DNA of 64,000 bases from Macrostomum lignano (taxonomy: Eukaryota), in assembly GCA_002269645.1 (NCBI GenBank), contig NIVC01000052.1, positions 744,001 through 808,000 of the forward strand, given 5' to 3'. Both the position numbers and the translations under genes were made by a program. This document shows, in pieces, positions 9,754-51,210 of the stretch. Positions within the stretch are counted from its first letter, which is position 1, and each line of letters starts with the position of its first letter. The notes beneath the pieces were generated by a model. It was not told the origin of the DNA, searched no databases, and was given only the letters and a program-made list of their open reading frames with translations.

Positions 9754-9827
<74 letters not shown>

Positions 9828-12509: not shown

Positions 12510-14688
12510 AATTCTGCCTGAAGATGGCTAGTTTTAGCCGAAACGCGTCGCAAATAATATTGAGTTTTGTCTTACTATTATCTGTTAAGAGTGCTTCTCT
12601 ACCGCAATTCTATTTCGATATCAACAAGCGCTACTTGAGACAAGTCAACTTGTCTCAAAAAGGTCCAAAGAACAAGCTGACGTTGCCAAGGTGAAACTGG
12701 ACAATAAGCTGAAGAGTCTCTGGATCGAGAAGCAATTCGCCTCTCCAATTCCGAACGCTGTTGTCAACCTTTCCCGGCATGAGCTTTCTCTAAATGAGCT
12801 ACATGCACTGCAATTTGGTTTGAAACACCCGATTCTTCCTTCCAAGCTCAACAAGTTTCACCTCTTCTCTGAGTTAGAGAATGCCATTGGTAAGTGTACT
12901 CGACCTCTTAGTAATACCGGTAGCCGTGACGCGCACTTCCTTCCCGATGGTTGCAAGAACAGAATTATCTCTGACACTGATCACTTCTGCTCCCGTGCTC
13001 TCATGTCCATCAACAATAAACAGAACAAGTTTTTTCACAGAACCCTTAAGGACATCCGTAATAATGAACAAATCAAAATTTTGAGCTTTGACAAGGGCTA
13101 TGGCGTTGCTATTTTAGACAGTGCTGAATATGAGGCCAAAATGACCAACTTAATTCAAGACAAAACCAAATTTAAATGCTTAGGACCTGCCGATGAAAGG
13201 GTTACCGTGTCACACCCTGTTCTTAAATCTGAACGCTCTATTCAAAACTATATTAGAACCTATGTCAGACCGCACATAAGTGACCATGTGTACAAGAAGA
13301 TTATGCCGTGTGGGAGTCAACCTGGCCAACTCTATGGCTCGTGCAAGGTCCATAAGGAAGACAAACCATTGAGACCCATTGTGTCTATGCTGAACACGGC
13401 TGAATATGAGCTGGCTAAATTTCTAGACTCATTTATCAAGCCATGCATCCCTCAGGAATTCAGTTTGCGGTCCAATAGGGAATTCATAACAGCCATCAGC
13501 AATTACACCCCATCTCGCGAAGATCAATTGTATAGCTTCGATGTCACCTCTCTATTTACCAATGTTCCGCTGAATCTGGCGATCGACATTGCTACCAATT
13601 TGGTCTTCAAAGACAACCCAGCGCCACCAATCCCGGAGAAAGTGTTTAAGAAATTGTTGGTTATTGCCACGTCTGGGATATTCCAATTCGGCGATAAGTA
13701 TTTCCAGCAAATTGACGGCTGCGCTATGGGCAGCCCTCTTGCCCCCACTCTTGCTAACGTTTGCATGTCACATTGGGAGAAAACCTGGATGGAAAAAAGC
13801 TGTGCTCCAAAATTTTACAAACGGTATGTCGATGACACATGCGCTATTTTTGATAACGAGGAAGACTTTCTGCAATTTTTCAACACAATAAACGCCACCC
13901 ATCCTAACATTAAATTCACCGTGGAATATGGTGGAAAGAAACTACCGTTTCTTGACATCGAGATCCATCTGAAGGACTGCGCTATTGAGACCGAAGTGTA
14001 TCGCAAGCCCACATTCACTAAATTGATGCTTAATTTCCAGGCGTTGTGCCCCAGGGAATGGAAGACGGGAGTCATTCGTTGTCTGCTTCATCGTGCCTAT
14101 ACAGTATGTTGCTCTTGGTCGTTGCTGCACAACGAGTTTACCAACATTATCAATATTCTCACTGCCAATGGATACCCTATCAACTACATCATGAAGGTTA
14201 TTGGTAATTTCTTAGATGAAAAAATTGAAAAAAAGCTTAAACCTAAGCGGCCAGATAGAGAACCAGGAGAACCAATCTTGACTCTTCCTTTTTTGGGCAA
14301 CTCTTCGATTGTGTTTAAGAGGCAAATTCGCAAAACTTGCCAAAAATTCTTTAAGACTAAGATTCATGTAGTGTTCCGTACTCATAAAGTCAGTCAATTT
14401 GTTGGGAGTTTAAAGTCTCGTGTTCCATGTGCTCTCAAGGCAGGTGTCATCTATCGTTTTCGTTGCTCTGTTGACCAGAGCATTACCTACATTGGTAAAA
14501 CCAAGCGACACCTACTCACGAGAGCCAAGGAACATAGGCAACGAAACTCTCCGATTCATGAACATTTGCTGCAATGCCATGGTTGTTGTGATGAGCCAGA
14601 CATAACCTCTCATTTCAAGGTCATAGACAACAGCAAAAATGAGCATAAACTTAACATTCTTGAAGCTCTGCACATTAAGTTACACAAA
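10422..14688. mobile_element. Penelope-like retroelement (Penelope/Poseidon type, C-terminal GIY-YIG) as an inverted dimer with 5' ends facing inward
   Basis: Arms 10443-12487 and 12644-14688 are reverse complements (coordinate sum 25131; identical translations in the ORF track). The insert is flanked by the direct repeat CAAAAAGCTTTGA at 10409-10421 and 14685-14697. Confidence 0.95.
12511..12560 (+). ncRNA. Minimal type I hammerhead ribozyme of the PLE pseudo-LTR
   Basis: Core CTGAAGA (12518-12524), stem II GGCTA/TAGCC with a GTTT loop, GAAAC, palindromic stem III ACGCGT, cleavage triplet GTC (cut after 12549), short stem I TGC/GCA. Matches the minimal HHRs established for PLEs. Confidence 0.85.
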
Positions 14689-17244: not shown

Positions 17245-17505
17245 ATGAATTTTAGTCATTACCCCTAAATAGAAAATATTCCCAAGACAGCAAGCATCCC
17301 CCAGTAGCAAGCATCCCCTAATACTCCTAGCAAGCATCCACCCAGATAGCAAGCATCTTGCAGATAGCAAGCATACCCCAAATAATGTAGAAGCATCCTT
17401 CCAGATAGCAAGCATCCTGCACATAGCAAGAATCCCTAAATAGCAAGCATCCCTGGATAGAAATAATCCTATACATGTAGCCAAGCTTATCAAGCGCAGT
17501 AATCC

Positions 17506-20500
17506 TTGGCTATCGAGTGCAGTAATCCTTGGTTTATTAATAGCAAAAATCCATGGCTTATCGAGTGCAGTAATCCTTGGTTTATTAATAGCAATAATCC
17601 TTGGCTTATCGAGTGCAGTAATCCTTGGTTTATTAATAGCAATAATCCTTGGCTTATCGAGTGCAGTAATCCTTGGTTTATTAATAGCAATAATCCTTGG
17701 CTTATCGAGTGCAGTAATCCTTGGTTTATTAATAGCAATAATCCTTGGCTTATCGAGTGCAGTAATCCTTGGTTTATTAATAGCAATAATCCTTGGCTTA
17801 TCGAGTGCAGCAATCCTTGGTTTATTAATAGCAATAATCCTTGGCTTATCGAGTGCAGCAATCCTTGGTTTATTAATAGCAATAATCCATGGCTTATCGA
17901 GTGCAGTAATCCTTGGTTTATTAATAGCAATAATCCTTGGCTTATCGAGTGCAGCAATCCTTGGTTTATTAATAGCAATAATCCTTGGCTTATCGAGTGC
18001 AGCAATCCTTGGTTTATTAATAGCAATAATCCTTGATAAATTAAGTGCAGTAATCCTTGGTTTATTAATAGCAATAATCCTTGGCTTATCGAGTGCAGTA
18101 ATCCTTGGTTTATTAATAGCAATAATCCTTGGCTTATCGAGTGCAGTAATCCTTGGTTTATTAATAGCAATAATCCTTGGCTTATCGAGTGCAGCAATCC
18201 TTGGTTTATTAATAGCAATAATCCTTGGCTTATCGAGTGCAGCAATCCTTGGTTTATTAATAGCAATAATCCTTGGCTTATCGAGTGCAGTAATCCTTGG
18301 TTTATTAATAGCAATAATCCTTGGCTTATCGAGTGCAGCAATCCTTGGTTTATTAATAGCAATAATCCTTGGCTTATCGAGTGCAGTAATCCTTGGTTTA
18401 TTAATAGCAATAATCCTTGGCTTATCGAGTGCAGCAATCCTTGGTTTATTAATAGCAATAATCCTTGGCTTATCGAGTGCAGTAATCCTTGGTTTATTAA
18501 TAGCAATAATCCATGGCTTATGAGTGCAGTAATCCTTGGTTTATTAATAGCAATAATCCTTGGCTTATCGAGTGCAGCAATCCTTGGTTTATTAATAGCA
18601 ATAATCCATGGCTTATCGAGTGCAGTAATCCTTGGTTTGCCAAGAGCAATAGTCCTTGGTTTATTGAGTGCAGTAATCCTTGGTTTATTAATAGCAATAA
18701 TCCTTGGCTTATCGAGTGCAGTAATCCTTGGTTTGCCAAGAGCAATAGTCCTTGGTTTATTGAGTGCAGTAATCCTTGGTTTATTAATAGCAATAATCCT
18801 TGGCTTATCGAGTGCAGTAATCCTTGGTTTATTAATAGCAATAATCCTTGGCTTATCGAGTGCAGTAATCCTTGGTTTGCCAAGAGCAATAGTCCTTGGT
18901 TTATTGAGTGCAGTAATCCTTGGTTTATTAATAGCAATAATCCTTGGCTTATCGAGTGCAGTAATCCTTGGTTTATTAATAGCAATAATCCTTGGCTTAT
19001 CGAGTGCAGTAATCCTTGGTTTATTAATAGCAATAGTCCTTGGTTTATCGAGTGCAGTAATCCTTGGTTTGCCAAGAGCAATAATCCTTGGCTTATCGAG
19101 TGCAGTAATCCTTGGTTTATTAATAGCAATAATCCTTGGCTTATCGAGTGCAGTAATCCTTGGTTTATTAATAGCAATAATCCATGGCTTATCGAGTGCA
19201 GTAATCCTTGGTTTATTAATAGCAATAATCCTTGGCTTATCGAGTGCAGTAAGCCTTGGTTTATTAATAGCAATAATCCTTGGCTTATCGAGTGCAGTAA
19301 TCCTTGGTTTATTAATAGCAATAATCCTTGGCTTATCGAGTGCAGTAATCCTTGGTTTATTAATAGCAATAATCCTTGGCTTATCGAGTGCAGTAATCCT
19401 TGGTTTATTAATAGCAATAATCCTTGGCTTATCGAGTGCAGCAATCCTTGGTTTATTAATAGCAATAATCCTTGGCTTATCGAGTGCAGCAATCCTTGGT
19501 TTATTAATAGCAATAATCCATGGCTTATCGAGTGCAGTAATCCTTGGTTTATTAATAGCAATAATCCTTGGCTTATCGAGTGCAGCAATCCTTGGTTTAT
19601 TAATAGCAATAATCCTTGGCTTATCGAGTGCAGCAATCCTTGGTTTATTAATAGCAATAATCCTTGGCTTATCGAGTGCAGTAATCCTTGGTTTATTAAT
19701 AGCAATAATCCTTGGCTTATCGAGTGCAGTAATCCTTGGTTTATTAATAGCAATAATCCATGGCTTATCGAGTGCAGTAATCCTTGGTTTATTAATAGCA
19801 ATAATCCTTGGCTTATCGAGTGCAGCAATCCTTGGTTTATTAATAGCAATAATCCTTGGCTTATCGAGTGCAGCAATCCTTGGTTTATTAATAGCAATAA
19901 TCCTTGGCTTATCGAGTGCAGTAATCCTTGGTTTATTAATAGCAATAATCCTTGGCTTATCGAGTGCAGCAATCCTTGGTTTATTAATAGCAATAATCCT
20001 TGGCTTATCGAGTGCAGTAATCCTTGGTTTATTAATAGCAATAATCCTTGGCTTATCGAGTGCAGCAATCCTTGGTTTATTAATAGCAATAATCCTTGGC
20101 TTATCGAGTGCAGTAATCCTTGGTTTATTAATAGCAATAATCCATGGCTTATGAGTGCAGTAATCCTTGGTTTATTAATAGCAATAATCCTTGGCTTATC
20201 GAGTGCAGCAATCCTTGGTTTATTAATAGCAATAATCCTTGGCTTATCGAGTGCAGTAATCCTTGGTTTGCCAAGAGCAATAGTCCTTGGTTTATTGAGT
20301 GCAGTAATCCTTGGTTTATTAATAGCAATAATCCTTGGCTTATCGAGTGCAGTAATCCTTGGTTTGCCAAGAGCAATAGTCCTTGGTTTATTGAGTGCAG
20401 TAATCCTTGGTTTATTAATAGCAATAATCCTTGGCTTATCGAGTGCAGTAATCCTTGGTTTATTAATAGCAATAATCCTTGGCTTATCGAGTGCAGTAAT

Positions 20501-21918
20501 CCTTGGTTTGCCAAGAGCAATAGTCCTTGGTTTATTAAGTGCAGTAATCCTTGGTTTATTAATAGCAATAATCCTTGGCTTATCGAGTGCAGTAATCCTT
20601 GGTTTATTAATAGCAATAATCCTTGGCTTATCGAGTGCAGTAATCCTTGGTTTATTAATAGCAATAGTCCTTGGTTTATCGAGTGCAGTAATCCTTGGTT
20701 TGCCAAGAGCAATAATCCTTGGCTTATCGAGTGCAGTAATCCTTGGTTTATTAATAGCAATAATCCTTGGCTTATCGAGTGCAGTAATCCTTGGTTTATT
20801 AATAGCAATAATCCTTGGCTTATCGAGTGCAGTAATCCTTGGTTTATTAATAGCAATAATCCTTGGCTTATCGAGTGCAGTAATCCTTGGTTTATTAATA
20901 GCAATAATCCATGGCTTATCGAGTGCAGTAATCCTTGGTTTATTAATAGCAATAATCCTTGATTAATAAAGTGCATTAATCCTTGGTTTATTAATAGCAA
21001 TAATCCTTGGCTTCTTGAGTGCAGTAATCCTTGGTTTATTAATAGCAATAATCCTTGGCTTATTGAGTGCAGTAATCCTTGGTTTGCCAGGAGCAATAGT
21101 CCTTGGTTTATCGAGTGCAGTAATCCTTGGTTTATTAATAGCAATAATCCTTGATTAATCAAGTGCATTAATCCTTGGTTTATTAATAGCAATAATCCTT
21201 GGCTTATTGAGTGCAGTAATCCTTGGTTTATTAATAGCAATAATCCTTGATAAATTAAGTGCAGTAATCCTTGGTTTATTAATAGCAATAATCCTTGGCT
21301 TATCGAGTGCAGTAATCCTTGGTTTATTAATAGCAATAATCCTTGGCTTATCGAGTGCAGTAATCCTTGGTTTATTAATAGCAATAATCCATGGCTTATC
21401 GAGTGCAGTAATCCTTGGTTTGCCAAGAGCAGTAATCCTTGGCTTATCGAGTGCAGTAATCCTTGGTTTGCCAAGAGCAGTAGTCCTTGGTTTATTGAGT
21501 GCAGTAATCCTTGGTTTATTAATAGCAATAGTCCTTGGTTTATTGAGTGCAGTAATCCTTGGTTTATTAATAGCAATAATCCTTGGCTTATCGAGTGCAG
21601 TAATCCTTGGTTTGCCAAGAGCAGTAATCCTTGGTTTATCAAGTGCAATAATCCTTGGTTTATCAAGTGCAATAATCCTTGGTTTATCGAGTGCAGTAAT
21701 CCTTGGTTTGCCAAGAGCAATAATCCTAAGTTTATCGAGTGCAGTAATCCTTAGTTTTCCAAGTGCAGTAATCCTTGGTTTATTAAGAGCAATAATCCTT
21801 GGCTTATCGAGTGTAGTAATCCTTGGTTTGCCAAGAGCAATAATCCTTGGCTTATCGAGTGCAGTATTCCTTGGTTTGCCAAGAGCAATAATCCTTAGCT
21901 TATCGAGTGCAGTAATCT
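17506..21918. repeat. 48-bp satellite (dimer of diverged 24-bp monomers) with higher-order block duplication
   Basis: GAGTGCAGTAATCCTTGGTTTATT + AATAGCAATAATCCTTGGCTTATC; degenerates at the right end. Confidence 0.98.

Positions 21919-22577: not shown

Positions 22578-22580
<3 letters not shown>
22480..22580 (+). mobile_element. Possible non-autonomous Helitron-like 3' end running into (GATA)n
   Basis: TGCAAGTTCGAATAAAATCGGTTGAGCCGTTT...CACACACATAC...TTTTAGTATAT resembles, from memory, the 3' ends of small invertebrate rolling-circle elements. Confidence 0.3.
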
Positions 22581-23966
<1,386 letters not shown>

Positions 23967-36394: not shown

Positions 36395-37924
36395 ATGGCC
36401 ACTAACGCCACCATCCCTAAAGAAACTGACCCGGTCGCCTCTGGCTCACCGGGATCAGCCGCTCCGGTAGCTACCACTGGTAGCACCAACGCCCAACCTG
36501 GTCCAACCGGGCCAGCTGACGCTGCCGCCGATCACCCTGGCCGCCAGTCTAGCCGACCGCGCACGGCCGAGTCTCGACGACAGCGGAACATCCGCCGCAA
36601 CCGTAAGCGGCAGGAGAAGCGGGCTGCTGCTGCGTCTGAGGAGGGCACGCAAGCCGCGGTGAGGCCTTCGGGAGCCACCGCAGCGGGGAGGCCCTCTGGG
36701 GAGTCCGGTGGCGCGGCTGGGCCGTCAGGAACCGCCGTGTCCTCGGGCTCTCAGGGGGGCAACCCTGCCGGCCTACCGCCTTCCAAAGACAAAGCGGCCC
36801 CGCTCAAGACCTCCGAGTCCTACGCGTCCAAGGTCAAGCAGCCGCTGCAACCCGCCGTGATGATCCTCGGCGGGGATTTCGACCTGACGCCCGAGCAGCT
36901 CGACGTCGCGTGGCGTACCATCGACGAGGGCTTGCTCAATCTAACCCTGGAGGGCGTCTTCGTGGACATCGTCAAGTCCACCAAGGCGAACGGGTGCATC
37001 CTACTGTGGTGCAAATCCGAGGAGAGCACCCAGCTCCTGCGGGATCAGCTGCCCAAGTTCGACTGGCACAGCGACCTGGGCCAGCTGACCTTCGCCTTGG
37101 AGAGCGAGCGGCCGAAGACCATCCGCCATCGGATTTGGGTCCCGGCCGACAGTGCAATCAAGTCCGGGGAGCAGCTGCGGCAGCTCCTGCTCAAGCGGCA
37201 CCCGGATCTCGACGCCAGTGGTCTTGTGTACCACAGCACGGTCCGCAAGGGCACGACCGGGGCCACAGTCATCCTCGGCCTGACGGAGGGATGGGCCAAG
37301 CGGCTACCGCACGGCACAAACCTCCACCTTGGTCTCCATCAACTGACCATCCTCCGCTGTGAGGAGGGCAAGGTGGAGACCAAGAAAGACGGGAAGCGCG
37401 CCGCTCCCGGAGCTGGGGCTCATGCCCCGCCGGCCAAGCGGCAGCAGCAACCCGATCCCGAGCCTAACAAGGCTATTCGCGCTGCTGAGTCCGCCTCGCG
37501 CGGACGTAGACCCGCCCGCAGTAGCCGGCGGTCCGGTCTAATCCAGCGCGCACTTGACGAAGCTCAGTCTCTGAGACTTCACCTCGAGCAGACTCGTGCC
37601 GCTCGAAAAAACACTGAAAGCCAGCCGAGGGAACTGGACGACGGCACGGCTCAGCCTTCCAACTGGTGGGATTACCACCAGGAGGACGCTGCCGGCCGAG
37701 CTCAGACTCCCGACGGCGGGGCGCAAGGCGAAGGCAGCAGCCGTACCCCAGTCGCTGGGGAGGAGGGCGGTGTAGCGCGGCTAGGTGACTCACCTGCCGT
37801 GGGCGCCGTGTCCGCCTCCGCGGCGGCTGGGGAGGCGGCTGAGCCTGAGCCAATGGAAATTGGCGACTCAACTCTCACCGATGAGGCTGAGAATGAGTTG
37901 CTTTTCTCCTCCCCTGGACAGTAG
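36395..37924 (+). CDS. ORF1 (gag-like nucleic-acid chaperone; basic N-terminus, DUF4780-like middle, no CCHC knuckle)
   Basis: 509-aa ATG ORF ending 2 nt before the ORF2 ATG; SYASKVK...LTPEQL...GCILLWC segment. Confidence 0.8.
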   Translation: MATNATIPKETDPVASGSPGSAAPVATTGSTNAQPGPTGPADAAADHPGRQSSRPRTAESRRQRNIRRNRKRQEKRAAAASEEGTQAAVRPSGATAAGRPSGESGGAAGPSGTAVSSGSQGGNPAGLPPSKDKAAPLKTSESYASKVKQPLQPAVMILGGDFDLTPEQLDVAWRTIDEGLLNLTLEGVFVDIVKSTKANGCILLWCKSEESTQLLRDQLPKFDWHSDLGQLTFALESERPKTIRHRIWVPADSAIKSGEQLRQLLLKRHPDLDASGLVYHSTVRKGTTGATVILGLTEGWAKRLPHGTNLHLGLHQLTILRCEEGKVETKKDGKRAAPGAGAHAPPAKRQQQPDPEPNKAIRAAESASRGRRPARSSRRSGLIQRALDEAQSLRLHLEQTRAARKNTESQPRELDDGTAQPSNWWDYHQEDAAGRAQTPDGGAQGEGSSRTPVAGEEGGVARLGDSPAVGAVSASAAAGEAAEPEPMEIGDSTLTDEAENELLFSSPGQ

Positions 37925-37926
37925 AC

Positions 37927-40900
37927 ATGACTGTCTCCCAGGGCATCCACTGCTTGCAGGTCAACCTGCAGCACAGCATTGCTGCTTCAGTCAACCTCTT
38001 GAAGCACACTGACCAATACGTGCCAGGGATTATCCTTATCCAGGAACCTTGGACGCTTAGGGGCAGCCCCCAACATGTCCCCACCGGCTACCAGTGTTTA
38101 ACCGCTGGTACCCGGGAGGGAAACCTGGCACCAAGATCCTGCATCATGGTGTCCAGTTCTATTAACGCATGGCTCAGATCAGACCTGTCCACCAGGGACA
38201 TCTGTGTCATCCAGTCTGAAGACATACTCCCTGGGAGGACTACCCTCATCGCCTCGGTTTACCTACCGGGCGACGGCGAGATGATCCCAGTAGAGCTTGT
38301 CACACTGGTCGAGCTCTGCTCCACCAGAAACTATGAGCTGCTCGTGGCAGGTGACATCAATGCCCACCACACCCACTGGGGCAGTTCTGATATAAACCAG
38401 AGAGGTGAAGACTTCCTGGCTTATATTGCTACTACAACCCTTGAGTTCTGTAACTCGGGTAGTACCCCTACCTTCAATAACGGACGCCGATCGGAGGTGC
38501 TGGATGCCACCCTCGCCACGCCCAGGCTCTTCCAGAGCACTAGGGAATGGCGGGTGCTTCCTGAGGCGTCCCTCTCCGATCACAAGTTCGTCTCTTTCAC
38601 GCTGGCCAGCGCCCGTAACGCAGGCCAGCTTTACTGGAAACGGAATGCTAGGAATACCGACTGGACCGCCTTCAGGCTTGCCCTGGAGGAGACCTATCGT
38701 TGCACTAGCGCTCCAGTCTCCATCAACACCTGCGAAGAAGCAGATGAATTTGCGGCCGCACTTACGGACTCGCTCACTGCTGCCTTCGAAGCCTCATGCC
38801 CACTAAAGGCATATAAAGGCAAACAGTCGGCCCCATGGTGGAACCCGCAGCTTGGCGACCTCCGTCGCAGAGCCAAAAGGCTTCACCGCAGGGCCCAAAA
38901 AACTAAAAACCCGGCCGACCAAACCGCCTACCTGAACTCTATCCACGAGTTCAAGAGGCAGGTTAGGAACGCCAAAACCAACAAGTGGCGCGAATACTGT
39001 GAGGAACTTGAGGGCTCCCGCCCCACCTCCAGAATCGTTAAAGCCCTCACCCTGGACAAAATGTCCAAACTCTCCTCAGTCAAGAGAGCCGACGGCTCGC
39101 TCACTGAGAACCCAGGAGAAACACTGGAAGCGATGCTAACAGCGTTTTTCCCGAACGAGCCAGCTAGGCCCGGCCCCCCTGACCACTCAGTGGGCGGACA
39201 CGTACTGGCTGACTCAATCATCACGGAGGACCGCGTTACTAAAGCTGTCTCCTCCTTCAAACCCTTCAAATCCCCAGGACCGGACGGCGTTGTGCCAGCC
39301 TTCCTGCGGGAGGCGGTGAAATGCACCGGTTTCCTGCGGAACCTTTGCCGGCTTCTGAAAGCCTGCATTGTGCTCGGCTTTGTTCCGAAATCCTGGACCG
39401 AGGCCAAGGTGGTCTTTATCCCCAAGCCTGGCCGACCGGACTACCGGTCCATTAAATCCTTCAGACCAATTAGCCTCACCTCCTCATTGGTGAAGCTGTT
39501 AGAGAGACTGGTGCTCTGGCGCCTCCTCTCTGTGGAACTGAAGAACAAGCCGCTCAGTGAGAACCAGCATGCCTTTCGGGCAGGCAGGTCCACGGAGAGC
39601 GCGCTTCACGTTCTGGTTGACATGCTGGAGAAAGCCGTTCTTGGTAATGGCTACGCTCTCGCTGTCTTCCTCGACATTGTTGGAGCCTTCGATAATGTCC
39701 TCTTTGAGGCCTTTGACAGAGCTCTACGTGCTAGAGGAACCCACTCGCACCTCACCCGGTGGATCATGTATATGATCAGCCACCGTACTGCCACCGCACA
39801 CCTGTTGGGCCACCAACGGACGGTAACCGTCTGCAAAGGCAGCCCCCAGGGCGGTGTCCTCTCTCCAGTTCTCTGGAACATGGTCATCGATGAGCTCCTC
39901 CAGGACAGCCATCTTGACCCCATCCTCAAGGTCGGTTACGCCGATGATGTCACAGCCGTGGCATCCGGACCGTCACCTGAAACCCTTAGAGATCTTTTGC
40001 AAAACTTCATTCGCTCTGCTGAACGTTGGGCGGACAGGTGCGGCCTCAGGCTCTCCGAGACCAAAACTGTCGCGATCATGTTCACCAGCAGGGTAAACTG
40101 GCGTATTCGCCCACTAAAGCTTTACGGGGTGGAAATTCCATCCTGCAAGCAAACCAAGTGTCTCGGCGTTACGCTGGACCACCGGCTGAGCTGGTCCACC
40201 CACGTCCAGGCCAAAACCAAAAAAGCCCTCGCGATTCTTGCGCAGCTGCGCAGAGCCGTCGGCACCACCTGGGGCCTCACCCCAAAGCGTCTCTGGTGGA
40301 TCTATACCGCAATGGTCCGACCGGCCGTTACATACGCCGGCCTGGTCTGGACCAGCGCCTTGCAGATTAAAACCTGCCACGAAGCCCTCAAAAAGGTGCA
40401 GGGACGTGCGTGCCGCATGATCCTGAATGCCCCGCTCTCTGCTCCCTTTGACGGCCTCAACGCCTTTCTCTGCCTCCCGCCTCTGGACATCTTTGTCCGT
40501 CGCGAGGCTGCTAAAACCACCCGCCGGCTCATCGAGGCTGGTGTTAGCTTCAAGCCACAAAGAGCGATGGCGAAGCGCAAGCTCCTGCCGCACTCTGACC
40601 TGTGCCTTAAAGTTCTGGAGGAGAGTGGGAGTGCGGCTGTCCTTTCGGACGCTGAACCGCGCTCCCTCAACCTCTACCAACGCTTCAAGGTCACGATCCC
40701 CTCCAGGGAGAACGCCAACGACAGCTGGGCCCCTCAGGAGGTTCACTGCTTCACTGACGGATCCTCCAAAGACGGTTTATCCGGCTTTGGAGTCTGCATC
40801 CTTATCAACGGCCGCGTGATTGCTACTCACGCCCAACACACTGGCAGACTCTCCAGCGTCTTCCAGAATGAAGTCCTTGCCATCAGCTCCTGTGCAGCTG

Positions 40901-41630
40901 AGCTCCACCGCAAGGACTTCAAGGACAGAAGAATCTTCTTCCACTCTGACAGCCAGGCCGCTTTACAGGCCCTGTGTCACACCACTACGAACTCCCGAAC
41001 AGTCCGCGACTGTATCGGGCAGCTCAACAAGCTGGCTCGGAGGAACACCGTCCGGCTCACGTGGATCCCAGGACACGCCGGCTTCAAAGGTAACGAGCTC
41101 GCCGACTCCCTCGCTAAGGCGGGCTGTTCCGGCTCGCCCCTTGGCCCCGTGCCCCTGGCCCCCATCCCCGCCACAGTCATTAATCGTCAGATTAACGACT
41201 GGGCGGACATCCTGCACTTGCGCAGATGGGATGGTATCTCCAACTGCCGCCAATCTCGTGCGGCAGTGCCCAATCCGTCCCTCAAGCTGCGGAGAATCCT
41301 TTTGAATCAAAATCGAAAAGATATCCGCGCTCTCACTATGACCTTCACAGGTCACGGTTGCTTTGCCAGGCACTGCTTCCTCCGATGGTTCGCCGGAGTG
41401 AACTCTGCCCCTTCTGCAGCCTCGAGAATGAAGATGCCATGCACTTCGTCTGCTACTGCCCGGCCTTCAACCGAGACCGGCTCAACCACCTCGGGCCCAA
41501 CCCGTCCCTGGACGACGTTTGCCGGCCCGAGAACATCCCACGGCTCATCCGGTTCCTCCGGGCCACCAAGCGAGCCTCCGTCTTCCCCACCGAAGACAAC
41601 GCTGCAGACAGGACCGGCAGACCTCCCTGA
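37927..41630 (+). CDS. ORF2: APE endonuclease - reverse transcriptase - RNase H - CCHC zinc finger, with a 1-nt frameshift near 41375-41400
   Basis: APE motifs QVNLQH, IQEPW, GDINAHH, SDHKF; RT motifs KSPGPDG, RPISL, QHAFR, LDIVGAFD, GSPQGGVLSP, YADD; RNase H motifs FTDGS, VFQNE, SDSQAAL, WIPGHAG..GNELAD. The true C-terminus CPFC...HFVCYC lies in another frame (track ORF 41226-41630). Confidence 0.93.
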
Positions 41631-44600
41631 CCGGCCCCGCGCCCTAGCCTATGCGGGTCTTTCAGGGATTAGCGGAATGGGCGACGCTCGCCTCCCCGCT
41701 GCGTCTTCGGACCGCCCTGCAGCTAAGTCAAGTAAGTAAGTCAAGGTCAAAAAGTAAGTTGCATGGCCAGTATAGACCAAGGGAGTTGCACATGTATGAT
41801 CTTGAAAGTAGATAACACCTGTCCCATTGGCAATATTAGGCATCCCAGCATTGCATAGGAGGTAGTCTATGTATTAATGGGTTTGAGCCTAATCTTACCT
41901 AAATAAATAAGCCCTATAAGATAAACAACAGGATATCTTGAATACGTTAGAGGCAATAGCCCTTAGCCAAGATAAATAAATAAAGGAAAGAAGACTCCTA
42001 TGACAACTTTGATGATAGCAGTAGATAAAGCTTAGAATAAACAGCCTTATTATAAGTTTGTAATAGTGATTGAGATTTAAAGTAAGTCATCCCTACTTTA
42101 TAGTCTAGATCATGCTGGGTACACACCCCAAAAAAATTAAATAGTCACAAATGCATGCAAAAAAATAGTGTGCATGCCCATTCTCAAAACTATGCCGGTA
42201 TTATGTCAATAAATGACCTTTTCTGAATTGCATAATGAACCTTTTTGGCAAGTATTTTGGTTACTTTTTCTGCTTTTTCAGCTGTACTTTGTATAGTAGA
42301 AAATTAATGCATACAAAGATTTGTTTAAATGCTTTATTACGAGCTTTAAAAACCCAGAAAGCTTGAAATTTACACTTAAGAATGAACTTTTTTCATCTTT
42401 TTTTACTTCACAATAACTCTTCCATGTGATTCTATAAAGTGCATTCCAGGTGTACACGCACACTTTTTTCTTAGGAGTGATACACACCAACTGTGGACAC
42501 CTACTTTTGGCATGTATAGCCAATGCACGCCCAAATTTTTGGGCATAGCCTATGCTATATGATCTAGAATGTAGCCTTTACTACAATTTTTAAAAGCATT
42601 TAACAGAGATAAAATGAAAAGAACACTGACAACTTAGTAGCAATAGGCCTTAGTGAGATTTAAATTTGGGTCAGCCAGCCCTGTGATAATCATAATTTTT
42701 CACTTTTAATTTGTTGCTATCATATAATTATAAAAGACACTAAGGGTCAAAAATATATTCAAAGTGTGATTTTAAATTTTGATTTTAGCTAATTGATAAA
42801 GAACAAAGAATACAAATATAACTAATTCAACGGATTCATAACATACATTAAAGAATTAGGGAATAGTTCTTAAAGAAAGACTGGCTTTGGCTATTACATA
42901 ATGCTAATATATAATATAAAGCAAACTAGAATGGCTGCACCAAGACAATCAGTTCAAATATGTTCTGATCTAATATCAGGCCTATAGCTATATTTGGTTA
43001 GACTTCTTCTCAATTTTAGGTTGATATTGATAAATTAGTTACAGTTTTGAATCTTGATAGGATCATAATTTTGTTTGTATATGGTTTTGGATAATGCTCA
43101 TTTCCGATTTAAGTGTCTGGCAATAGTTTCAGAAAAAGGGAAAATCGGGATAATTTCATCGACCTAAACTTGAAGAAGTCCACTTGGGCTTAGCCTTTTT
43201 TCAGTCTCGAGTCTCAAACTTTATCTCAACTGACTAGTTAAAAATTATGACGATACAGAGACGCCACTTTATCTCAACTGACTAGTTTGACGATACAGTG
43301 ATGATAAGGGAACAATCTATTATTGATGTATTACTACCATTTACGATTAACTGAAAATCTGACAAGTCATCAAAAGGTTGACAATCAATCAATCAATGAA
43401 TCAATCAATCCGAGTTTTTTTAACTATACAATTATTTTAAATATACAGTTAGATTTTTTAAAAAATTTGCCATGCGACTTTCTTTAAAAAGAAATGCAAT
43501 ATTATGAAGCTATTGCTCAGAATTGTCCACAGTATTAATTAAAATAAATCACAATTGGTTTTCAAAAATATATTGCTGTCGAATAAATATTTAACCCATC
43601 TTATTCTTTGTTTTATAGAAATAAAAGCCGAGATCTTCTGGCAGCTTGCCATTCAGTCACAAAGTACCTTTCGGTACGCAATGAATTTCTAATTTGGAAA
43701 AAAGGATGCCAACTTCGGAATAGAGCCTGAAGTAAGGCTCCGGAGGATCGGAGCAAACGGACTGCAATAGACATGCAACCAAGGACCACTAGGATCGGAC
43801 CAGTTGGCTAAATCTGGAACTTTACTTCCGGCTACATATCTAGCTCCAACTGACCTATCCCGCCATTTCTTTCTCTCGAGTGATTTTCACTTTCCGACAG
43901 GATGCTGGAATTAAAACGAGAAATCTGTATTTACGAGGAAATTATGCGCAGTACATCGATCAATTGGTCGCATTAATTTTTTTATAGAAAAACATCAAGT
44001 ATCGGCCGGAAAGTTTTAATGATGGGCCAGGTCACCCCGATCGTAACTCCTACCCAAGGAGAGGAGACTCGGAAAAGGCTGCAGAGTCATGCAATTCAAG
44101 CGGGGTTGAAATAGCTAGCCAACACAACAAAAATAGTTTCAAAATCAAAACTCTGTGTTTGGATGTGTCACAGCCCTTTGGGCTCATGGCCCTTTATTCT
44201 TATACATGGCCCTTATTCTATACATTAGACATGTATAATAACACCAGGTTCCTGATTTTTTCGACAAGAGCAACTTCAATTCTTCCTAGGTTATGGCCGT
44301 CGGCTTTTGTGATGTAAAAAACATTGGGCTAGGGTTGCAGCGGCTGATCCCATCCACGTAAAAACATCCTTAAACCTACTCCTACATGCACAGTAAAAAG
44401 TAACTAGTGCGCCTGGGTTGTCTACATGGCATCCCAATCCCTATTTAATTTAAGCATCATATGCAGGCCGATTGTACAGGCCGACTTGATGTCACGCTTG
44501 TGTGAACATGCAGTCTCTGCTGTAAATGCATGGTTCTCCACGGACAATGGACTAGTCTCCAACAGTAATTAAACATGTTCGCCTCTAAGAGGCATATTGT

Positions 44601-47600: not shown

Positions 47601-49532
47601 GTGCTTGCTCAAGGATATAAACCCTTCGACTTGATTCTAGAACAACCGACTCGACAGCCTTTTTCAGCTGGTCTTGCCTCCCGCAGAAGGGAAGACTGGT
47701 CGGGGGAGGGGAATGGAAAAGCTGGTAAACTTCGACTTTTCTAACTCCGGTTGCGAGAAACCGCCTTAGGGCGAGTTAAGTGAACTCTCCATCTTCTTTC
47801 TTCTCTCGTCTCAGCTACTCAACGGAGCAGTTCTCCTTCCCTGTGCGATTTTTCTAATAAATAAGCTCCCGTGATCAAGCAGTCGTAACAGCCCAACAAA
47901 GCCTGGGGACCGAGGTCGCGGTGTCTTCAAACGATCCCCGAACAGTCAGTCCTTCCGTGCTTGATTTTCTAGCAATGACGGCACACAAAAAGCGAGTTTA
48001 TCCTTCGTCTCAAACTGCAGTCTCAAGAGACTGGCGCAATTCTGTCGATCCGAAAGTGCGTCGCCTCATTTGCATTTTAATTCAGCAGTGAATTTTCCGA
48101 CCTACCGCCCCTGTGTGCATTCAGAATGGTGAGCAGTACGGCGAATTTGATCCCGGTAGCGCAGCCGGCCGTTCTACTCCTGCGGTCATCAAGTTTCACT
48201 GGGCTCCCAGCGGCAGGCCGCTCAACAACTTGAGCCGATCGCGGGCACCGGACTCCGTGCAGCTCCAGACTCTCTCTTTAAATGCTTTGCAGATTACTTT
48301 GCCGCATTTTTACTGAAAGTTCTGTTTTGTTAGTCGAACAAACAGTAGTCCACCTCGTACAGCTTAATCAATGAGGCCTACAAGGCCACCTTCATGTCAA
48401 GGCTTCAGAGAGTAAGACGTTAATTAACCAGCTGGTGTGTTTAGTCTCAATCAAAATGGAGTTTGCCTGACAAGTGGATCAGCGTGATTTGCGTCAGCAA
48501 AAATACGAGCCTGCAACAATAGATGGACCGGAAAACCTGGTTGCCTCACAGAATTCTTAATAAAACTTTCGAAAGAGTTAATCAGGTACAAGAAGAGTTC
48601 GGAAGTTACTGAGCACTTCGCCCTTGAGTGCCTCGGCCAGATTATCCAGCTGAGCGAATCTGCAGCAGCACTGACTCCCATGTCTATTTGCTGCTTGCTT
48701 CCCTCTACTATAGAAAATATTCCGTGAAGGGTGTTTTTGTCCTTTTCAAGGGGCTATTCCAGACGAAATTTTGACATTAGCATAATTTTTCAATCTGATA
48801 TTTGATATCCTTGATTTCCTAAAATCTGAGAGTTAATTTGTAGAGCGCACGCTATCAGTGTGCGCTAGGAGACATGAATCGTCCCAGAGTACAATGATGT
48901 CGCTTCTTTTTCTGATCTCTAAATTGCAAATGAAGGGCGGGAATCTGCACAGCGCAAACCAATTTTATGTCTAATTGGATGAGCACTGAACGAACGGGCT
49001 CGGTTTTTTGGACCCTCGTTCAGAGAAATGAGTTCGAATCGGAACGTGTTGATCTGGTGCGCTATCAGAAATAAGATACAGTGCGAAAAAATTGTGCTCC
49101 TTGCACCATTTGCATGCATTCCATTAAATGTATGAAGTATAGTGAACCATGTTGAGATATGAGTAATCAATGCCAGCGTCAGCCATGTTCCAGCTAGTAC
49201 GAGCTAGCCAGAAAGCGTCCTAAAAGGCTATGCTTCCATTCTGTTTCTGTTCATCCGCAGCAACCAATTTCTTTTGTTCAAAGCATTCACCAGTTGTCTC
49301 CAGTTGATTTTGTCTAATTACGAGTCGGAACATGCGATGTGAGCTCTGCTGACGATTCATTAAGGCCTGAAACAGCTCCGACTCTGCGGAGGTGGGGACT
49401 GCGCTCCGTTAGCTAGCTTGATTTCCTTCCATTTACCAAAGCCCGCCGCCTGCCTGCAGCCAATGGGAATGTGAGAATGGCATGCGTAGGGATGAGGACG
49501 TTACTAGGGGGGGGGGGGGGTGGCATAGCGTC

Positions 49533-49539
49533 TATATAA
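49533..49539 (+). promoter_or_regulatory. TATA box (TATATAA) of the neuropeptide gene; CCAAT at ~49460
   Basis: 110 nt upstream of the ATG, preceded by GCCAAT and a G14 run. Confidence 0.7.
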
Positions 49540-49642
49540 CTGCCGCCTCCGTCTAAAGCTCATCCGCTGCTCACCGACTGCAAAGCATATTATCGTCGAA
49601 TTTTACAAGACATTGCAGAGAGCTGTGACTGCTACCTCAAAG

Positions 49643-50152
49643 ATGCCGGTTTCGTGCTGCGGATCCATTCGCTTGCTGGCCTCCGGGCTTCTGCTACTAA
49701 CCGTGGCAGCTACCGTCATGGCAGACGCCGCTCCCAGCGACTCCCATGCTGTTGAGCAACCCCACCATGAGCACCAAGACAGCAAGCGATTCTTCGGCGG
49801 CGACCGTTTCAAGAAGTTCTTTGGCGCCAACGACCGCTACAAGAAGTTCTTTGGCGCCAACGACCGCTACAAGAAGTTCTTTGGCGCCAACGACCGCTTC
49901 AAAAAGTTTCTAGAGAACAACGACCGTTACAAGAAGTTCTTCGAGAACAACGACCGTTACAAGAAGTTCTTCGAGAACAACGACCGCTTCAAGAAGTTCT
50001 TCGAGAACAACGACCGCTTCAAAAAGTTTCTTGAGAACAACGACCGTTACAAGAAGTTCTTCGAGAACAACGACCGTTACAAGAAGTTCTTCGAGAACAA
50101 CGACCGTTACAAGAAGTTCTTCAAGAACAACGACCGTTACAAACGCGCCTAA
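49643..50152 (+). CDS. Intronless neuropeptide precursor (169 aa) yielding 12 FF/FL-x-DRY/DRF peptides
   Basis: Signal peptide (RLLASGLLLLTVAATVMA), short His-rich spacer, then peptides separated by KK/KR; TATA upstream and AATAAA downstream. Confidence 0.9.
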   Translation: MPVSCCGSIRLLASGLLLLTVAATVMADAAPSDSHAVEQPHHEHQDSKRFFGGDRFKKFFGANDRYKKFFGANDRYKKFFGANDRFKKFLENNDRYKKFFENNDRYKKFFENNDRFKKFFENNDRFKKFLENNDRYKKFFENNDRYKKFFENNDRYKKFFKNNDRYKRA

Positions 50153-50293
50153 AATAATTTGGATTTGAAATGTGAATTGAAAGTGATCTAAATGCCACAG
50201 GCCCACAGTAGGTGCAAAATGATATATAACAGATAAGCATGACGATCCCCGTTGAGCATATAAGCTCGGAGTTAAATGCTGTGACAAACTTGC

Positions 50294-50329
50294 AATAAAC
50301 TAATTTTCAAGAACAGCTAGGCTAATAAA
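50294..50329 (+). terminator. Two polyadenylation signals AATAAA (50294, 50324)
   Basis: About 140-175 nt after the stop codon. Confidence 0.6.
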
Positions 50330-51210
50330 TCAGATTCTTTGTGTGCAGTTCCCTATTTTTATCGCATGCTTTACCGAGTTCGGACTGTAGTAAAACCGTT
50401 TTAGTTGGAAAAAATATATTTGATGTTTCTCACAGCTTTGAGATGAGTTTGTCCCGCACTAATCTTGCAAAATCAACGCAGCTTCGCGTACGTGTTAATA
50501 GTACGTACTGCCTGATCTCAGTTAAAGTGCAAAGACATAGGGCAAGAAAAAAAGAGCCGCCCCAACGATTATAACAATTCAAGTTCTGCATCAATTTTCT
50601 CAAGTTTAATTACACACTCTTAGCTTCTGGCCTGATGCGATCTGATTAGTTTCTCAAACCCCGCTTTCCTAGAAATGCCCGGTTCAGGAAAGGCTTGGAG
50701 CAGCGGCCGCTCTCCGAGCAGGAAGTCCAACGGATCAAAGCGGATTTCAATGAGTGATTGAAAGGAAGAAATCTGAGATTCGAGGATATTTCTCTAGCCG
50801 AGTCATATATGTCCAGCGTCCAGTGTTTGCCGTTTCGTAAGCTCAAAAGCAAAAAACAAATTTACTTATTGTTGCATCGAAGATAAAGCAGTCTGCGAGT
50901 TGAGCTGTACTATGAATTGAACTTCTGAATATCAATATATAGTTACTCTGTTCTTATGCATCGTGTGGAAAATTTATTGATTAACAGAATTCTTCACTTT
51001 CCAAAGTAGAAATTTCTGGATTAGCAATCATCAAATCATCAAACCGGTTTATCCAGATCCGGCTAGTCAATTTTTCTGTCAATTACCCACTACTGACGGG
51101 AGCAGAGCGCAGGTCGCGAGGCCCTATCGCAACATCAAGCAAAGAAACAGAGAGACGTTACCTGAAGGCTGCGCCCACCCCTCGCTAGCAGCAGAAGAGC
51201 TCGCGAGAGC

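What the first reader, a model, noticed from the sequence alone, without database searches (positions are those of the whole stretch)
49460..50330. Candidate new neuropeptide family: 12 non-amidated FF/FL...DRY/DRF peptides from one intronless precursor
Seen in sequence: CCAAT, TATATAA (49533), ATG 49643, a signal peptide, a His-rich spacer, then KR-FFGGDRF-KK-FFGANDRY(x2)-KK-FFGANDRF-KK-FLENNDRY-KK-FFENNDRY-KK-FFENNDRF(x2)-KK-FLENNDRY-KK-FFENNDRY(x2)-KK-FFKNNDRY-KR-A*, then AATAAA x2. Established: dibasic KK/KR sites are prohormone-convertase sites, and C-terminal amidation needs a Gly before the basic pair. Every peptide ends in Arg-Phe or Arg-Tyr like RFamides/RYamides, but none has that Gly, so all are predicted free acids. 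Aromatic ends around an acidic/polar core also recall pedal-peptide/orcokinin-type peptides. Inference: an unassigned, possibly lineage-specific signalling peptide family whose receptor would be unknown. I do not recognise it, but I could not search databases.
Basis: partly seen in the sequence, partly recalled or inferred. Interest (0 to 1): 0.8.

Follow-up and report, generated by a model that had tools for sequence, protein, structure and literature searches.

The report
Flatworm multi-copy secreted peptide precursor gene
A small gene in a Macrostomum flatworm genome encodes a secreted precursor that should be cut into twelve near-identical 7-8-residue peptides ending in Asp-Arg-Tyr/Phe. 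It belongs to a previously undescribed two-gene family, probably signalling peptides, but neither expression nor processing has been shown.

Summary
An ATG at 49643 opens a 169-codon ORF. It encodes a signal peptide, a His-rich spacer and a KR site, then 12 units F[FL]xxxDR[FY] separated by KK, ending KR-Ala-stop. A TATATAA lies 110 bp upstream and two AATAAA lie downstream.

Transposon proteins place the window in Macrostomum lignano or a sibling species. This genome is full of minisatellites, but this array is coding. It is the only 1 of 94 ATG-ORFs in the window with both a signal-like N-terminus and multiple dibasic sites. Phe1, Arg7 and Lys9 vary only synonymously, the final K-to-R change needs 3 nucleotide changes, and one unit is shorter by an in-frame codon.

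A search of 1.84 billion representative proteins found one real relative. It is an M. lignano "hypothetical protein" present at two loci and encoding LFGTPDRY-KR repeats. It shares the 30-bp period, the uninterrupted ORF, the TATA position and a related signal peptide.

No Pfam family, planarian prohormone or paper in the library matches. Planarian mass spectrometry shows that flatworms cleave KK sites and make non-amidated peptides ending in an aromatic residue.

Best reading: a lineage-restricted prohormone-type precursor. Neural expression, processing and any receptor remain untested.

The parts
49460..49464 (+). CCAAT-box-like motif, about 70 bp upstream of the TATA
   Evidence: Read directly from the sequence. 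Function not tested.
49533..49539 (+). TATATAA, the putative TATA box, 110 bp upstream of the ATG
   Evidence: The paralogue loci L001 and L002 also carry TATATAA about 105-115 bp upstream of their ATG.
49643..49723 (+). Signal-peptide coding part (aa 1-27, MPVSCCGSIRLLASGLLLLTVAATVMA; predicted cleavage VMA|DA)
   Evidence: It has the three-part signal-peptide layout: Arg10, a 15-residue hydrophobic core, and small residues at -3/-1. Best 12-residue Kyte-Doolittle mean is 2.46. It is similar to the paralogue's signal region; 8 of 2000 shuffles reach the observed score. SignalP was not available.
49724..49783 (+). Acidic, His-rich spacer propeptide DAAPSDSHAVEQPHHEHQDS
   Evidence: charge -4.9 at pH 7.
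49784..49789 (+). First dibasic site (Lys48-Arg49) in front of the peptide array
49790..50146 (+). Array of 12 peptide units (one of 27 nt, eleven of 30 nt). Each unit is F-[FL]-x(1-3)-D-R-[FY] plus KK; the last unit ends in KR.
   Evidence: Phe1, Arg7 and Lys9 vary only synonymously. Asp6 is invariant. Position 8 is Tyr or Phe. The last Lys-to-Arg change is AAG to CGC.
50147..50152 (+). C-terminal Ala codon and TAA stop
50294..50299 (+). First AATAAA polyadenylation-signal-like hexamer
50324..50329 (+). Second AATAAA hexamer

Best explanation
This is a real protein-coding gene of Macrostomum lignano (or a sibling species) with an uninterrupted coding sequence. It encodes a prohormone-type precursor, and the proposed pathway is as follows. 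The 27-residue signal peptide directs the protein into the secretory pathway. Subtilisin-like proprotein convertases (PC2 in neurons, or a furin-type enzyme) cut after KR49, after each of the 11 KK pairs and after the final KR; every site carries Arg at P4 (R-[YF]-K-[KR]). A carboxypeptidase E-like enzyme then trims the basic residues. The products would be 12 peptides with free C-termini: FFGGDRF, 2x FFGANDRY, FFGANDRF, 2x FLENNDRY, 3x FFENNDRY, 2x FFENNDRF and FFKNNDRY, plus an acidic spacer peptide. With no Gly donor, none can be amidated. The peptides most likely act as intercellular signals (neuropeptide or peptide hormone) on an unknown receptor. The gene belongs to a small family, so far seen only in Macrostomum, whose second member encodes LFGTPDRY-type peptides. 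The array grows and shrinks by unequal exchange of 30-bp and 120-bp units. Shown here: the ORF, its architecture, the signs of coding constraint, the paralogy and the absence of known relatives. Inferred: transcription of this copy, cleavage at KK, the free-acid products, neural expression and a signalling role.
For: Architecture and uniqueness in the window. Coding constraint inside the array: synonymous-only variation at Phe1, Arg7 and Lys9; invariant Asp6; a conservative Tyr/Phe alternation; a dibasic site kept through a 3-nucleotide change (AAG to CGC); and a 27-nt unit that keeps the frame. Paralogue: phmmer against 1.84 billion representative proteins gave 88 hits. The roughly 50 whose sequences I inspected, apart from the M. 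lignano relative, were unrelated 10-residue-period repeat proteins; two of them were EFLGamide-type peptide precursors matched only through the repeat period. The one real relative was PAA88951.1 from M. lignano. A profile search added a second locus. Both genomic ORFs are continuous and encode SLFGSPDRY-KR, six or seven LFGT[PT][DG]RY-KR units, LFGTPLDRF-RRRDAKR, LFGF[KE]QANRF-RR, FYRTGSYFDARPDRF-KR and FDE. They share the 30-bp period, and TATATAA sits about 110 bp upstream of the ATG. There is no DNA-level similarity between the two genes, while Arg is kept with different codons (CGY versus AGG), so conservation is at the protein level. The signal-plus-spacer similarity alone is reached by 8 of 2000 shuffles, and the in-register unit score by 0 of 20000. 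The paralogue's sites are canonical R-x-K-R and RR. The Mlig_3_7 gene models are purely transcript-based (PMC5730564), so the paralogue is transcribed. For flatworm processing, planarian MS data show cleavage at KK (PPP-1, SPP-1, SPP-12, SPP-13) and non-amidated peptides ending in an aromatic residue (SPP-12 ...QRF before KK; SPP-16 QFDPIMY), together with dependence on pc2 (PMC2953531). M. lignano has a PC2 homologue whose promoter drives expression throughout the nervous system (PMC12435804). AlphaFold gives no confident fold (pLDDT 50.8, pTM 0.22). The predicted peptides are neutral to acidic.
Against: There is no transcript, peptide or expression evidence for this copy. Its product is not in the protein collection, neither as an exact sequence nor as a close variant, so it is unannotated in the public M. 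lignano proteomes. Counted over all changes, substitutions among units are not depleted in non-synonymous changes (about 4 synonymous against 13 non-synonymous events); constraint is seen only at particular positions. The two paralogue loci differ by 4 non-synonymous and 0 synonymous changes, one of which breaks a DRY motif (LFGTPGRY). KK is a weak convertase site in most animals. No relatives were found outside M. lignano. R-x-K-R sites would also allow processing in non-neural cells.
Confidence: 0.55

Rival explanations
1. The precursor is processed as described, but in non-neural secretory cells such as prostate, shell/cement, pharyngeal, rhabdite or epidermal glands. The peptides would then be released to the outside or into a mating partner as a pheromone, a seminal-fluid allohormone or a defensive product, not used as a neuropeptide.
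For: Every site has Arg at P4 (R-x-K-[KR]), which is the furin-type context used in constitutive secretion. The family is lineage-restricted. The paralogue copies differ only by non-synonymous changes and by copy number, a pattern also seen in fast-evolving reproductive or secreted genes. M. lignano gland and seminal-fluid genes are described as rapidly evolving and unannotatable (PMC4490696).
Against: The peptides are 7-8 residues long and neutral to acidic, unlike cationic antimicrobial peptides. Strict conservation of the D-R-[FY] C-terminus across old paralogues with no DNA similarity looks like ligand-type constraint. The architecture equals that of MS-verified planarian neural prohormones. 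The paralogue IDs were absent from the supplementary files held as text for four M. lignano papers, one of them a comparative RNA-seq study of reproduction-related genes; this is weak evidence, since most tables may not be held.
Confidence: 0.25
2. The protein is secreted but not cut at the KK pairs. It would act intact as a ~15 kDa repetitive, Lys- and aromatic-rich protein, for example a component of an adhesive, coacervate, mucus or eggshell material.
For: KK is the least efficiently cleaved dibasic pair in many taxa (general knowledge). The mature protein is basic (pI about 9.9) and rich in Phe, Tyr and Lys. It has a decapeptide repeat, as many secreted structural proteins do. AlphaFold draws short helices per unit, but at low confidence.
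Against: The paralogue uses KR and RR at the equivalent positions, which are strong cleavage sites. The array is bracketed by KR on both sides. Basic character at the last site was kept through a 3-nucleotide change. KK is cleaved in planarian prohormones according to MS.
Confidence: 0.1
3. It is not a functional gene. On this reading it is one of the many minisatellites of this genome that happens to be open in frame behind an ATG, or a decaying unexpressed duplicate.
For: Tandem and simple repeats make up 15% of the M. lignano genome and fill this window. The array is open in other frames as well. The product is missing from public protein sets. There is no overall deficit of non-synonymous changes.
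Against: Many features coincide: TATA box, first ATG, signal peptide, spacer, KR, in-register units, KR-Ala-stop and two AATAAA. This is the only ORF of its kind among 94 in the window. It shows protein-level homology, without DNA similarity, to a transcribed paralogue of the same layout. Conserved positions show synonymous-only variation.
Confidence: 0.07

Closest known systems
Macrostomum lignano hypothetical proteins BOX15_Mlig016576g1 (PAA88951.1 / A0A267GSE9) and BOX15_Mlig015463g1
   Same: Same species. Both have a signal peptide of related sequence, a short spacer, a first basic site, a 30-bp/10-residue tandem unit x-F-G-x-x-D-R-[YF] plus a dibasic pair, no Gly amidation donor, a continuous ORF, and TATATAA about 110 bp upstream.
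   Different: No DNA similarity. The sites are KR/RR instead of KK. The core is LFGTPDRY instead of FF(GA/EN)NDR[YF]. The paralogue also has three longer divergent C-terminal peptides (LFGTPLDRF, LFGFKQANRF, FYRTGSYFDARPDRF). Its public gene models are 50 and 40 residues shorter than the genomic ORFs because repeat units were modelled as introns.
Planarian 'secreted peptide prohormones' with non-amidated products (Smed-SPP-12, SPP-16; Collins et al. 2010, PMC2953531)
   Same: These are small flatworm prohormones with a signal peptide and peptides flanked by KR or KK. MS verified peptides with free C-termini ending in Phe or Tyr. SPP-12's NYMDFFGLNGDMQRF-KK even shares FFGxN...D..RF-KK.
   Different: BLASTP of SPP-12 against the window protein gives E = 0.07 and nothing against the paralogue. 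No planarian prohormone contains DRY or DRF. SPP-12 is single-copy rather than a 12-unit array.
FMRFamide-like / RFamide-RYamide peptide precursors (FLPs; Pfam FARP)
   Same: Many tandem copies of a short peptide ending Arg-Phe or Arg-Tyr, separated by dibasic sites.
   Different: The defining Gly that is converted to the C-terminal amide is absent from all 12 units and from every unit of the paralogue. There is no Pfam FARP match even at E = 10. An acidic residue precedes Arg.
Pedal peptide / orcokinin-type precursors (e.g. Smed-PPP-1/-2)
   Same: Multi-copy, non-amidated peptides with aromatic and acidic residues, flanked by KR or KK.
   Different: Flatworm pedal peptides are 11-12 residues long with x-Y-[YF]-D-x-I-G-x-x-L-L. 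The peptides here are 7-8 residues with no D-x-IG or GLL/GFGF motif, and no alignment is possible.

Membership tests
Prohormone / neuropeptide precursor (generic class) | N-terminal signal peptide | tested here: met
   Three-part signal-peptide layout, hydrophobic 12-residue window with KD mean 2.46, and V-M-A|D at -3/-1. This is a heuristic test; SignalP was not available.
Prohormone / neuropeptide precursor (generic class) | Short peptides flanked on both sides by mono- or dibasic convertase sites, often in multiple copies | tested here: met
   12 units bounded by KR, 11 KK pairs and a final KR. The paralogue uses KR and RR. KK cleavage in flatworms is verified by MS.
Prohormone / neuropeptide precursor (generic class) | Expression in neurons or endocrine cells, and mature peptides detectable | not testable with these tools
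   No transcriptome, in situ or peptidome data for M. lignano could be queried. The paralogue IDs were not found in the supplements of four papers.
FMRFamide-like / RFamide-RYamide peptides | C-terminal Arg-Phe or Arg-Tyr | tested here: met
   All 12 units end in R-F or R-Y.
FMRFamide-like / RFamide-RYamide peptides | Gly immediately before the basic site (amide donor) | tested here: not met
   0 of 12 units here and 0 of all units in both paralogue loci.
FMRFamide-like / RFamide-RYamide peptides | Match to the Pfam FARP profile | tested here: not met
   No such hit at E up to 10.
Pedal peptide / orcokinin | 11-20-residue peptides with a conserved [FY]-D-x-[IL]-G core and a G/L-rich or GFGF C-terminus | tested here: not met
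   Compared with MS-verified Smed-PPP-1/-2 peptides (GAYYDPIGGGLL, SYFDKIGSDLL). Neither length nor motif is shared.
Pedal peptide / orcokinin | Non-amidated, multi-copy precursor | tested here: met
   This feature is shared by many unrelated families.
Macrostomum xFGxxDR[YF] precursor family (proposed here; Mlig016576/Mlig015463) | Homologous signal/spacer region plus in-register 10-residue unit x-F-[GE]-x-x-D-R-[YF]-basic-basic | tested here: met
   BLASTP E = 8e-13 for the single comparison. N-terminal region alone: 8 of 2000 shuffles reach the score. Unit in register: 0 of 20000. It was the only real hit among 1.84 billion representatives.
Planarian SPP-12 | Significant sequence similarity of precursor or peptide | tested here: inconclusive
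   FFGxN..D..RF-KK is shared by eye, but BLASTP gives E = 0.07 against the window protein and no alignment against the paralogue.

The most novel reading that the evidence does not exclude
The family is a Macrostomum-specific signalling system descended from RFamide/RYamide-type peptides that lost amidation. On this reading, free-acid ...DRF-OH / ...DRY-OH octapeptides act on a co-evolved receptor (a GPCR or a peptide-gated channel). The many slightly different copies, and the copy-number differences between duplicated subgenomes, would tune a behaviour such as mating, adhesion or feeding.
Probability: 0.12. Interest if true: 0.6.

Novelty: new member of a known kind. Interest (0 to 1): 0.4.

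Why it matters
If the peptides are real, they add an undescribed, non-amidated peptide family to the flatworm signalling repertoire. M. lignano is the one flatworm with stable transgenesis, so expression (a promoter-reporter built from about 600 bp upstream), function (RNAi) and processing (pc2 RNAi plus MS) are directly testable. The case also exposes a blind spot in annotation. Precursors built from near-identical 30-bp repeats are collapsed or dropped by short-read transcript assembly. The paralogue's public models lack 4-5 peptide copies, and this gene is absent from public protein sets. Beyond that, lineage-specific multi-copy precursors are found routinely by in-silico mining, so the find is useful but not surprising.

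Tried and rejected
- A word-indexed homology search with the precursor found nothing. An exact look-up of the product, and of the LINE ORFs, found nothing on record.
- phmmer against 1.84 billion representative proteins gave 88 hits. The roughly 50 sequences I inspected were, apart from the M. lignano paralogue, unrelated proteins with 10-residue repeats. Two were EFLGamide-type precursors (P0141, P0128), matched only through the KK(R) periodicity.
- A profile search and a metagenome scan added nothing outside M. lignano.
- Pfam found no family, at E = 0.01 or at E = 10. The UbiD_N hit on the paralogue is a repeat artefact: a 23-residue piece matched three times.
- Rfam and tRNA scans of the window found nothing. 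The bacterial promoter/terminator scan is not applicable to this genome.
- Full-text searches for all peptide strings and for the paralogue IDs gave no relevant paper. McVeigh et al. 2009 (PMC2749192), which lists M. lignano EST-derived precursors, is not held. Koziol et al. 2016 could not be searched (one search failed on term length). A prior description in either paper cannot be fully excluded.
- Supplement searches for Mlig016576 and Mlig015463 in four M. lignano papers found nothing.
- The promoter alignment of the two genes shows only the TATATAA and a GATT(T)CCTTCC motif, which is not significant for windows of this size.
- The similarity to SPP-12 was rejected as unsupported.
- AlphaFold on the single sequence gave a low-confidence model, so no fold search was run.
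- I considered that the window gene might be an allele of the paralogue. This was rejected because there is no DNA similarity in the flanks or the CDS.
- No further family members lie in the window or within 10 kb of the paralogues.
Full report
**What is in the sequence**

- Upstream elements: CCAAT at 49460, a run of 14 G at 49507-49520, and TATATAA at 49533-49539.
- The first ATG downstream of the TATA is at 49643. It opens a 169-codon ORF that ends with TAA at 50150-50152.
- The ORF encodes MPVSCCGSIRLLASGLLLLTVAATVMA (signal-like), DAAPSDSHAVEQPHHEHQDS (spacer) and KR, followed by 12 units.
- The units are FFGGDRF, FFGANDRY x2, FFGANDRF, FLENNDRY, FFENNDRY, FFENNDRF x2, FLENNDRY, FFENNDRY x2 and FFKNNDRY.
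- Eleven units are followed by KK and the last by KR-Ala-stop. No unit has a Gly before the basic pair.
- AATAAA occurs at 50294 and 50324.
- Tandem Repeats Finder sees a 30-bp period (11.4 copies) with a 120-bp, four-unit super-period. The unit pattern occurs 10 times against 0 expected in shuffles.

**Which organism**

The window is eukaryotic and packed with micro- and minisatellites. It also carries a Penelope-like element (reverse transcriptase plus GIY-YIG) and an intact LINE (endonuclease, reverse transcriptase, RNase H). The LINE ORF2 matches Macrostomum lignano UniRef entries. One match is 100% identical over a third of the query and many others are 55-77% identical. The window therefore comes from M. 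lignano or a very close relative. The published genome is described as 15% simple and tandem repeats (PMC5730564), which fits this window.

**Is the array coding or just another minisatellite?**

ORF length is no argument here. The other arrays in the window also give long ORFs in several frames, and this array is itself open in other frames. The evidence for coding comes from elsewhere.
- Of 94 ATG-ORFs of at least 60 aa in the window, only this one combines a hydrophobic N-terminal segment with four or more dibasic sites.
- The codon table of the 12 units shows variation that is purely synonymous at Phe1 (TTC/TTT), Arg7 (CGT/CGC) and Lys9 (AAG/AAA).
- The same table shows Asp6 invariant, and position 8 alternating only between Tyr and Phe.
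- The single Lys-to-Arg change at the last site is AAG to CGC. That is three nucleotide changes that keep the site dibasic.
- The first unit is 27 nt instead of 30 nt, which preserves the frame.
- Non-synonymous changes cluster at positions 2-5.

One qualification: counted over all events (about 4 synonymous against 13 non-synonymous) there is no global excess of synonymous change. The constraint is position-specific, not overall.

**Relatives**

- The word-indexed search found nothing, and the exact product is not on record.
- phmmer against 1.84 billion representative proteins gave 88 hits. The roughly 50 I inspected were, with one exception, unrelated proteins with a 10-residue repeat.
- The exception is P0140 (PAA88951.1), an M. 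lignano "hypothetical protein". A profile search added a second locus, P0165.
- At both loci of assembly GCA_002269645.1 the genomic ORF is continuous, at 174 and 184 aa.
- These ORFs encode a signal peptide, a spacer and SR-SLFGSPDRY-KR. Six or seven LFGTPDRY-KR units follow, with LFGTTDRY and LFGTPGRY variants at one locus.
- They end with LFGTPLDRF-RRRDAKR, LFGF[KE]QANRF-RR, FYRTGSYFDARPDRF-KR and FDE.
- The deposited 124- and 144-aa models are shorter because repeat units were modelled as introns.

Both genes share a 30-bp/10-residue unit in the same register, x-F-G-x-x-D-R-[YF] plus two basic residues. Both lack a Gly donor, have an uninterrupted ORF, and carry TATATAA about 110 bp upstream of the ATG. 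There is no DNA-level similarity between them. Arg is encoded CGY in one gene and AGG in the other, so what is conserved is the protein. The signal-plus-spacer region alone scores above all but 8 of 2000 shuffles, and the in-register unit score is reached by 0 of 20000 shuffles. I conclude these are old paralogues and that a small gene family exists. Because the Mlig_3_7 annotation is built only from transcript evidence, the paralogue is transcribed. No such evidence exists for the window copy.

**How it most likely works**

The layout is that of a multi-copy prohormone, and the steps below are inferred from it.
- Signal peptidase cuts, probably at VMA|DA.
- A convertase cuts after KR49, after each KK and after the final KR.
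- A carboxypeptidase trims the basic residues.
- Without Gly there is no amidation, so the products are 7-8-residue free acids, neutral to slightly acidic.

- KK is generally a poor cleavage site. However, planarian peptidomics verified KK cleavage by MS: PPP-1 ...DLRRF.KK and KK.YSYYDSIGSGLL; SPP-12 NYMDFFGLNGDMQRF.KK; also SPP-1 and SPP-13. The same study verified non-amidated peptides ending in Phe or Tyr, and dependence on pc2 (PMC2953531). M. lignano has a PC2 homologue whose promoter drives expression throughout the nervous system (PMC12435804).
- The invariant Arg lies at P4 of every site (R-[YF]-K-[KR]; R-Y-K-R in the paralogue). That is a furin-type context. Part of the D-R-[FY] conservation may therefore serve processing rather than receptor binding, and processing would also be possible in non-neural secretory cells.

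AlphaFold gives no confident fold (pLDDT 50.8, pTM 0.22). This is consistent with a precursor rather than a folded domain, although a single-sequence model is weak evidence.

**Comparison with known families**

- Pfam: no match at E = 0.01 or at E = 10, including no FARP match.
- RFamide/RYamide-type peptides: the Arg-Phe/Arg-Tyr end is shared. The defining Gly amide donor is absent from every unit of both genes, so membership fails.
- Pedal peptide/orcokinin: real flatworm pedal peptides (GAYYDPIGGGLL, SYFDKIGSDLL) share neither length nor motif, so this is rejected.
- Planarian prohormones: none of the Schmidtea precursor sequences in Table S5 contains DRY or DRF.
- SPP-12: its FFGLNGDMQRF-KK looks similar by eye, but BLASTP gives E = 0.07 against this protein and nothing against the paralogue. 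This is a lead only.
- Literature: no paper in the library prints any of the peptide strings or the paralogue identifiers. McVeigh 2009 and Koziol 2016 could not be read, which is the main gap in the novelty claim.

**Rival readings**

- The same processing could happen in gland cells, giving a pheromone, allohormone or defensive product. I put this at about 0.25. It is favoured by the furin-type sites, by lineage restriction and by the non-synonymous-only differences between the two paralogue loci.
- The protein could stay unprocessed as a Lys- and aromatic-rich repetitive secreted protein, about 0.1. The KR/RR sites at the equivalent positions in the paralogue argue against this.
- It could be a non-functional minisatellite ORF, about 0.07. 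The coincidence of promoter, signal peptide, in-register units, stop and poly(A) signals argues against this, as does protein-level paralogy.

**Verdict**

This is a genuine, previously undescribed prohormone-type gene family, found so far only in M. lignano. That it is neuronal, processed and bioactive remains inference.
- In kind it is ordinary, because lineage-specific multi-copy precursors are common in flatworms. As a family it is new. It is readily testable in this transgenic model.

Noticed in passing
L001:10001-10525 and L002:10001-10555 (GCA_002269645.1, NIVC01000169.1 and NIVC01001384.1): The public gene models of the paralogue (124 and 144 aa) are shorter than the continuous genomic ORFs (174 and 184 aa). 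Whole 30-bp repeat units were modelled as introns, probably because short-read transcripts collapse the repeats. The two loci also differ in unit number (6 vs 7 LFGTPDRY-type units) and by 4 non-synonymous and 0 synonymous changes.
   Followed up: yes
window 10443-12487 and 12644-14688: Two copies of a Penelope-like element (reverse transcriptase plus GIY-YIG endonuclease ORF, 668-727 aa) sit head to head as a 2045-nt, 100% complementary inverted repeat with a 156-nt gap. This is either a very recent insertion pair or an assembly artefact.
   Followed up: partly
window 36395-41739: An apparently intact LINE with ORF1 (509 aa, no Pfam hit) and ORF2 (1270 aa; endonuclease, RT, RNase H). It is GC-rich (57-65%) compared with its surroundings. 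Its C-terminal third is 100% identical to part of a UniRef M. lignano 'serine/threonine protein kinase' entry, and it matches other entries with LRR, ankyrin and peptidase domains. This suggests that transposon sequence is fused into public gene models.
   Followed up: partly
window 700-34100: The first half of the window is almost entirely tandem arrays with strong strand skews. Examples are a 48-bp unit x 91 copies (17496-21855), (GATA)n of 1.4 kb (22580-23966), (CAGA)n and (ACAG)n, and 27-, 34-, 40- and 42-bp minisatellites. All give long spurious ORFs in several frames.
   Followed up: no
window 49420-49430; L001 ~9806-9816: A GATT(T)CCTTCC motif lies about 90-110 bp upstream of the TATA box in both family members. 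A match of this length is not significant for 270-bp windows, but it could be a shared regulatory element.
   Followed up: partly
proteins P0141 and P0128 (hits): Two proteins of unknown origin in the representative library carry tandem RYSEFLGG-KK units. They are EFLGamide-type neuropeptide precursors and were picked up only because they share the 10-residue KK periodicity.
   Followed up: no
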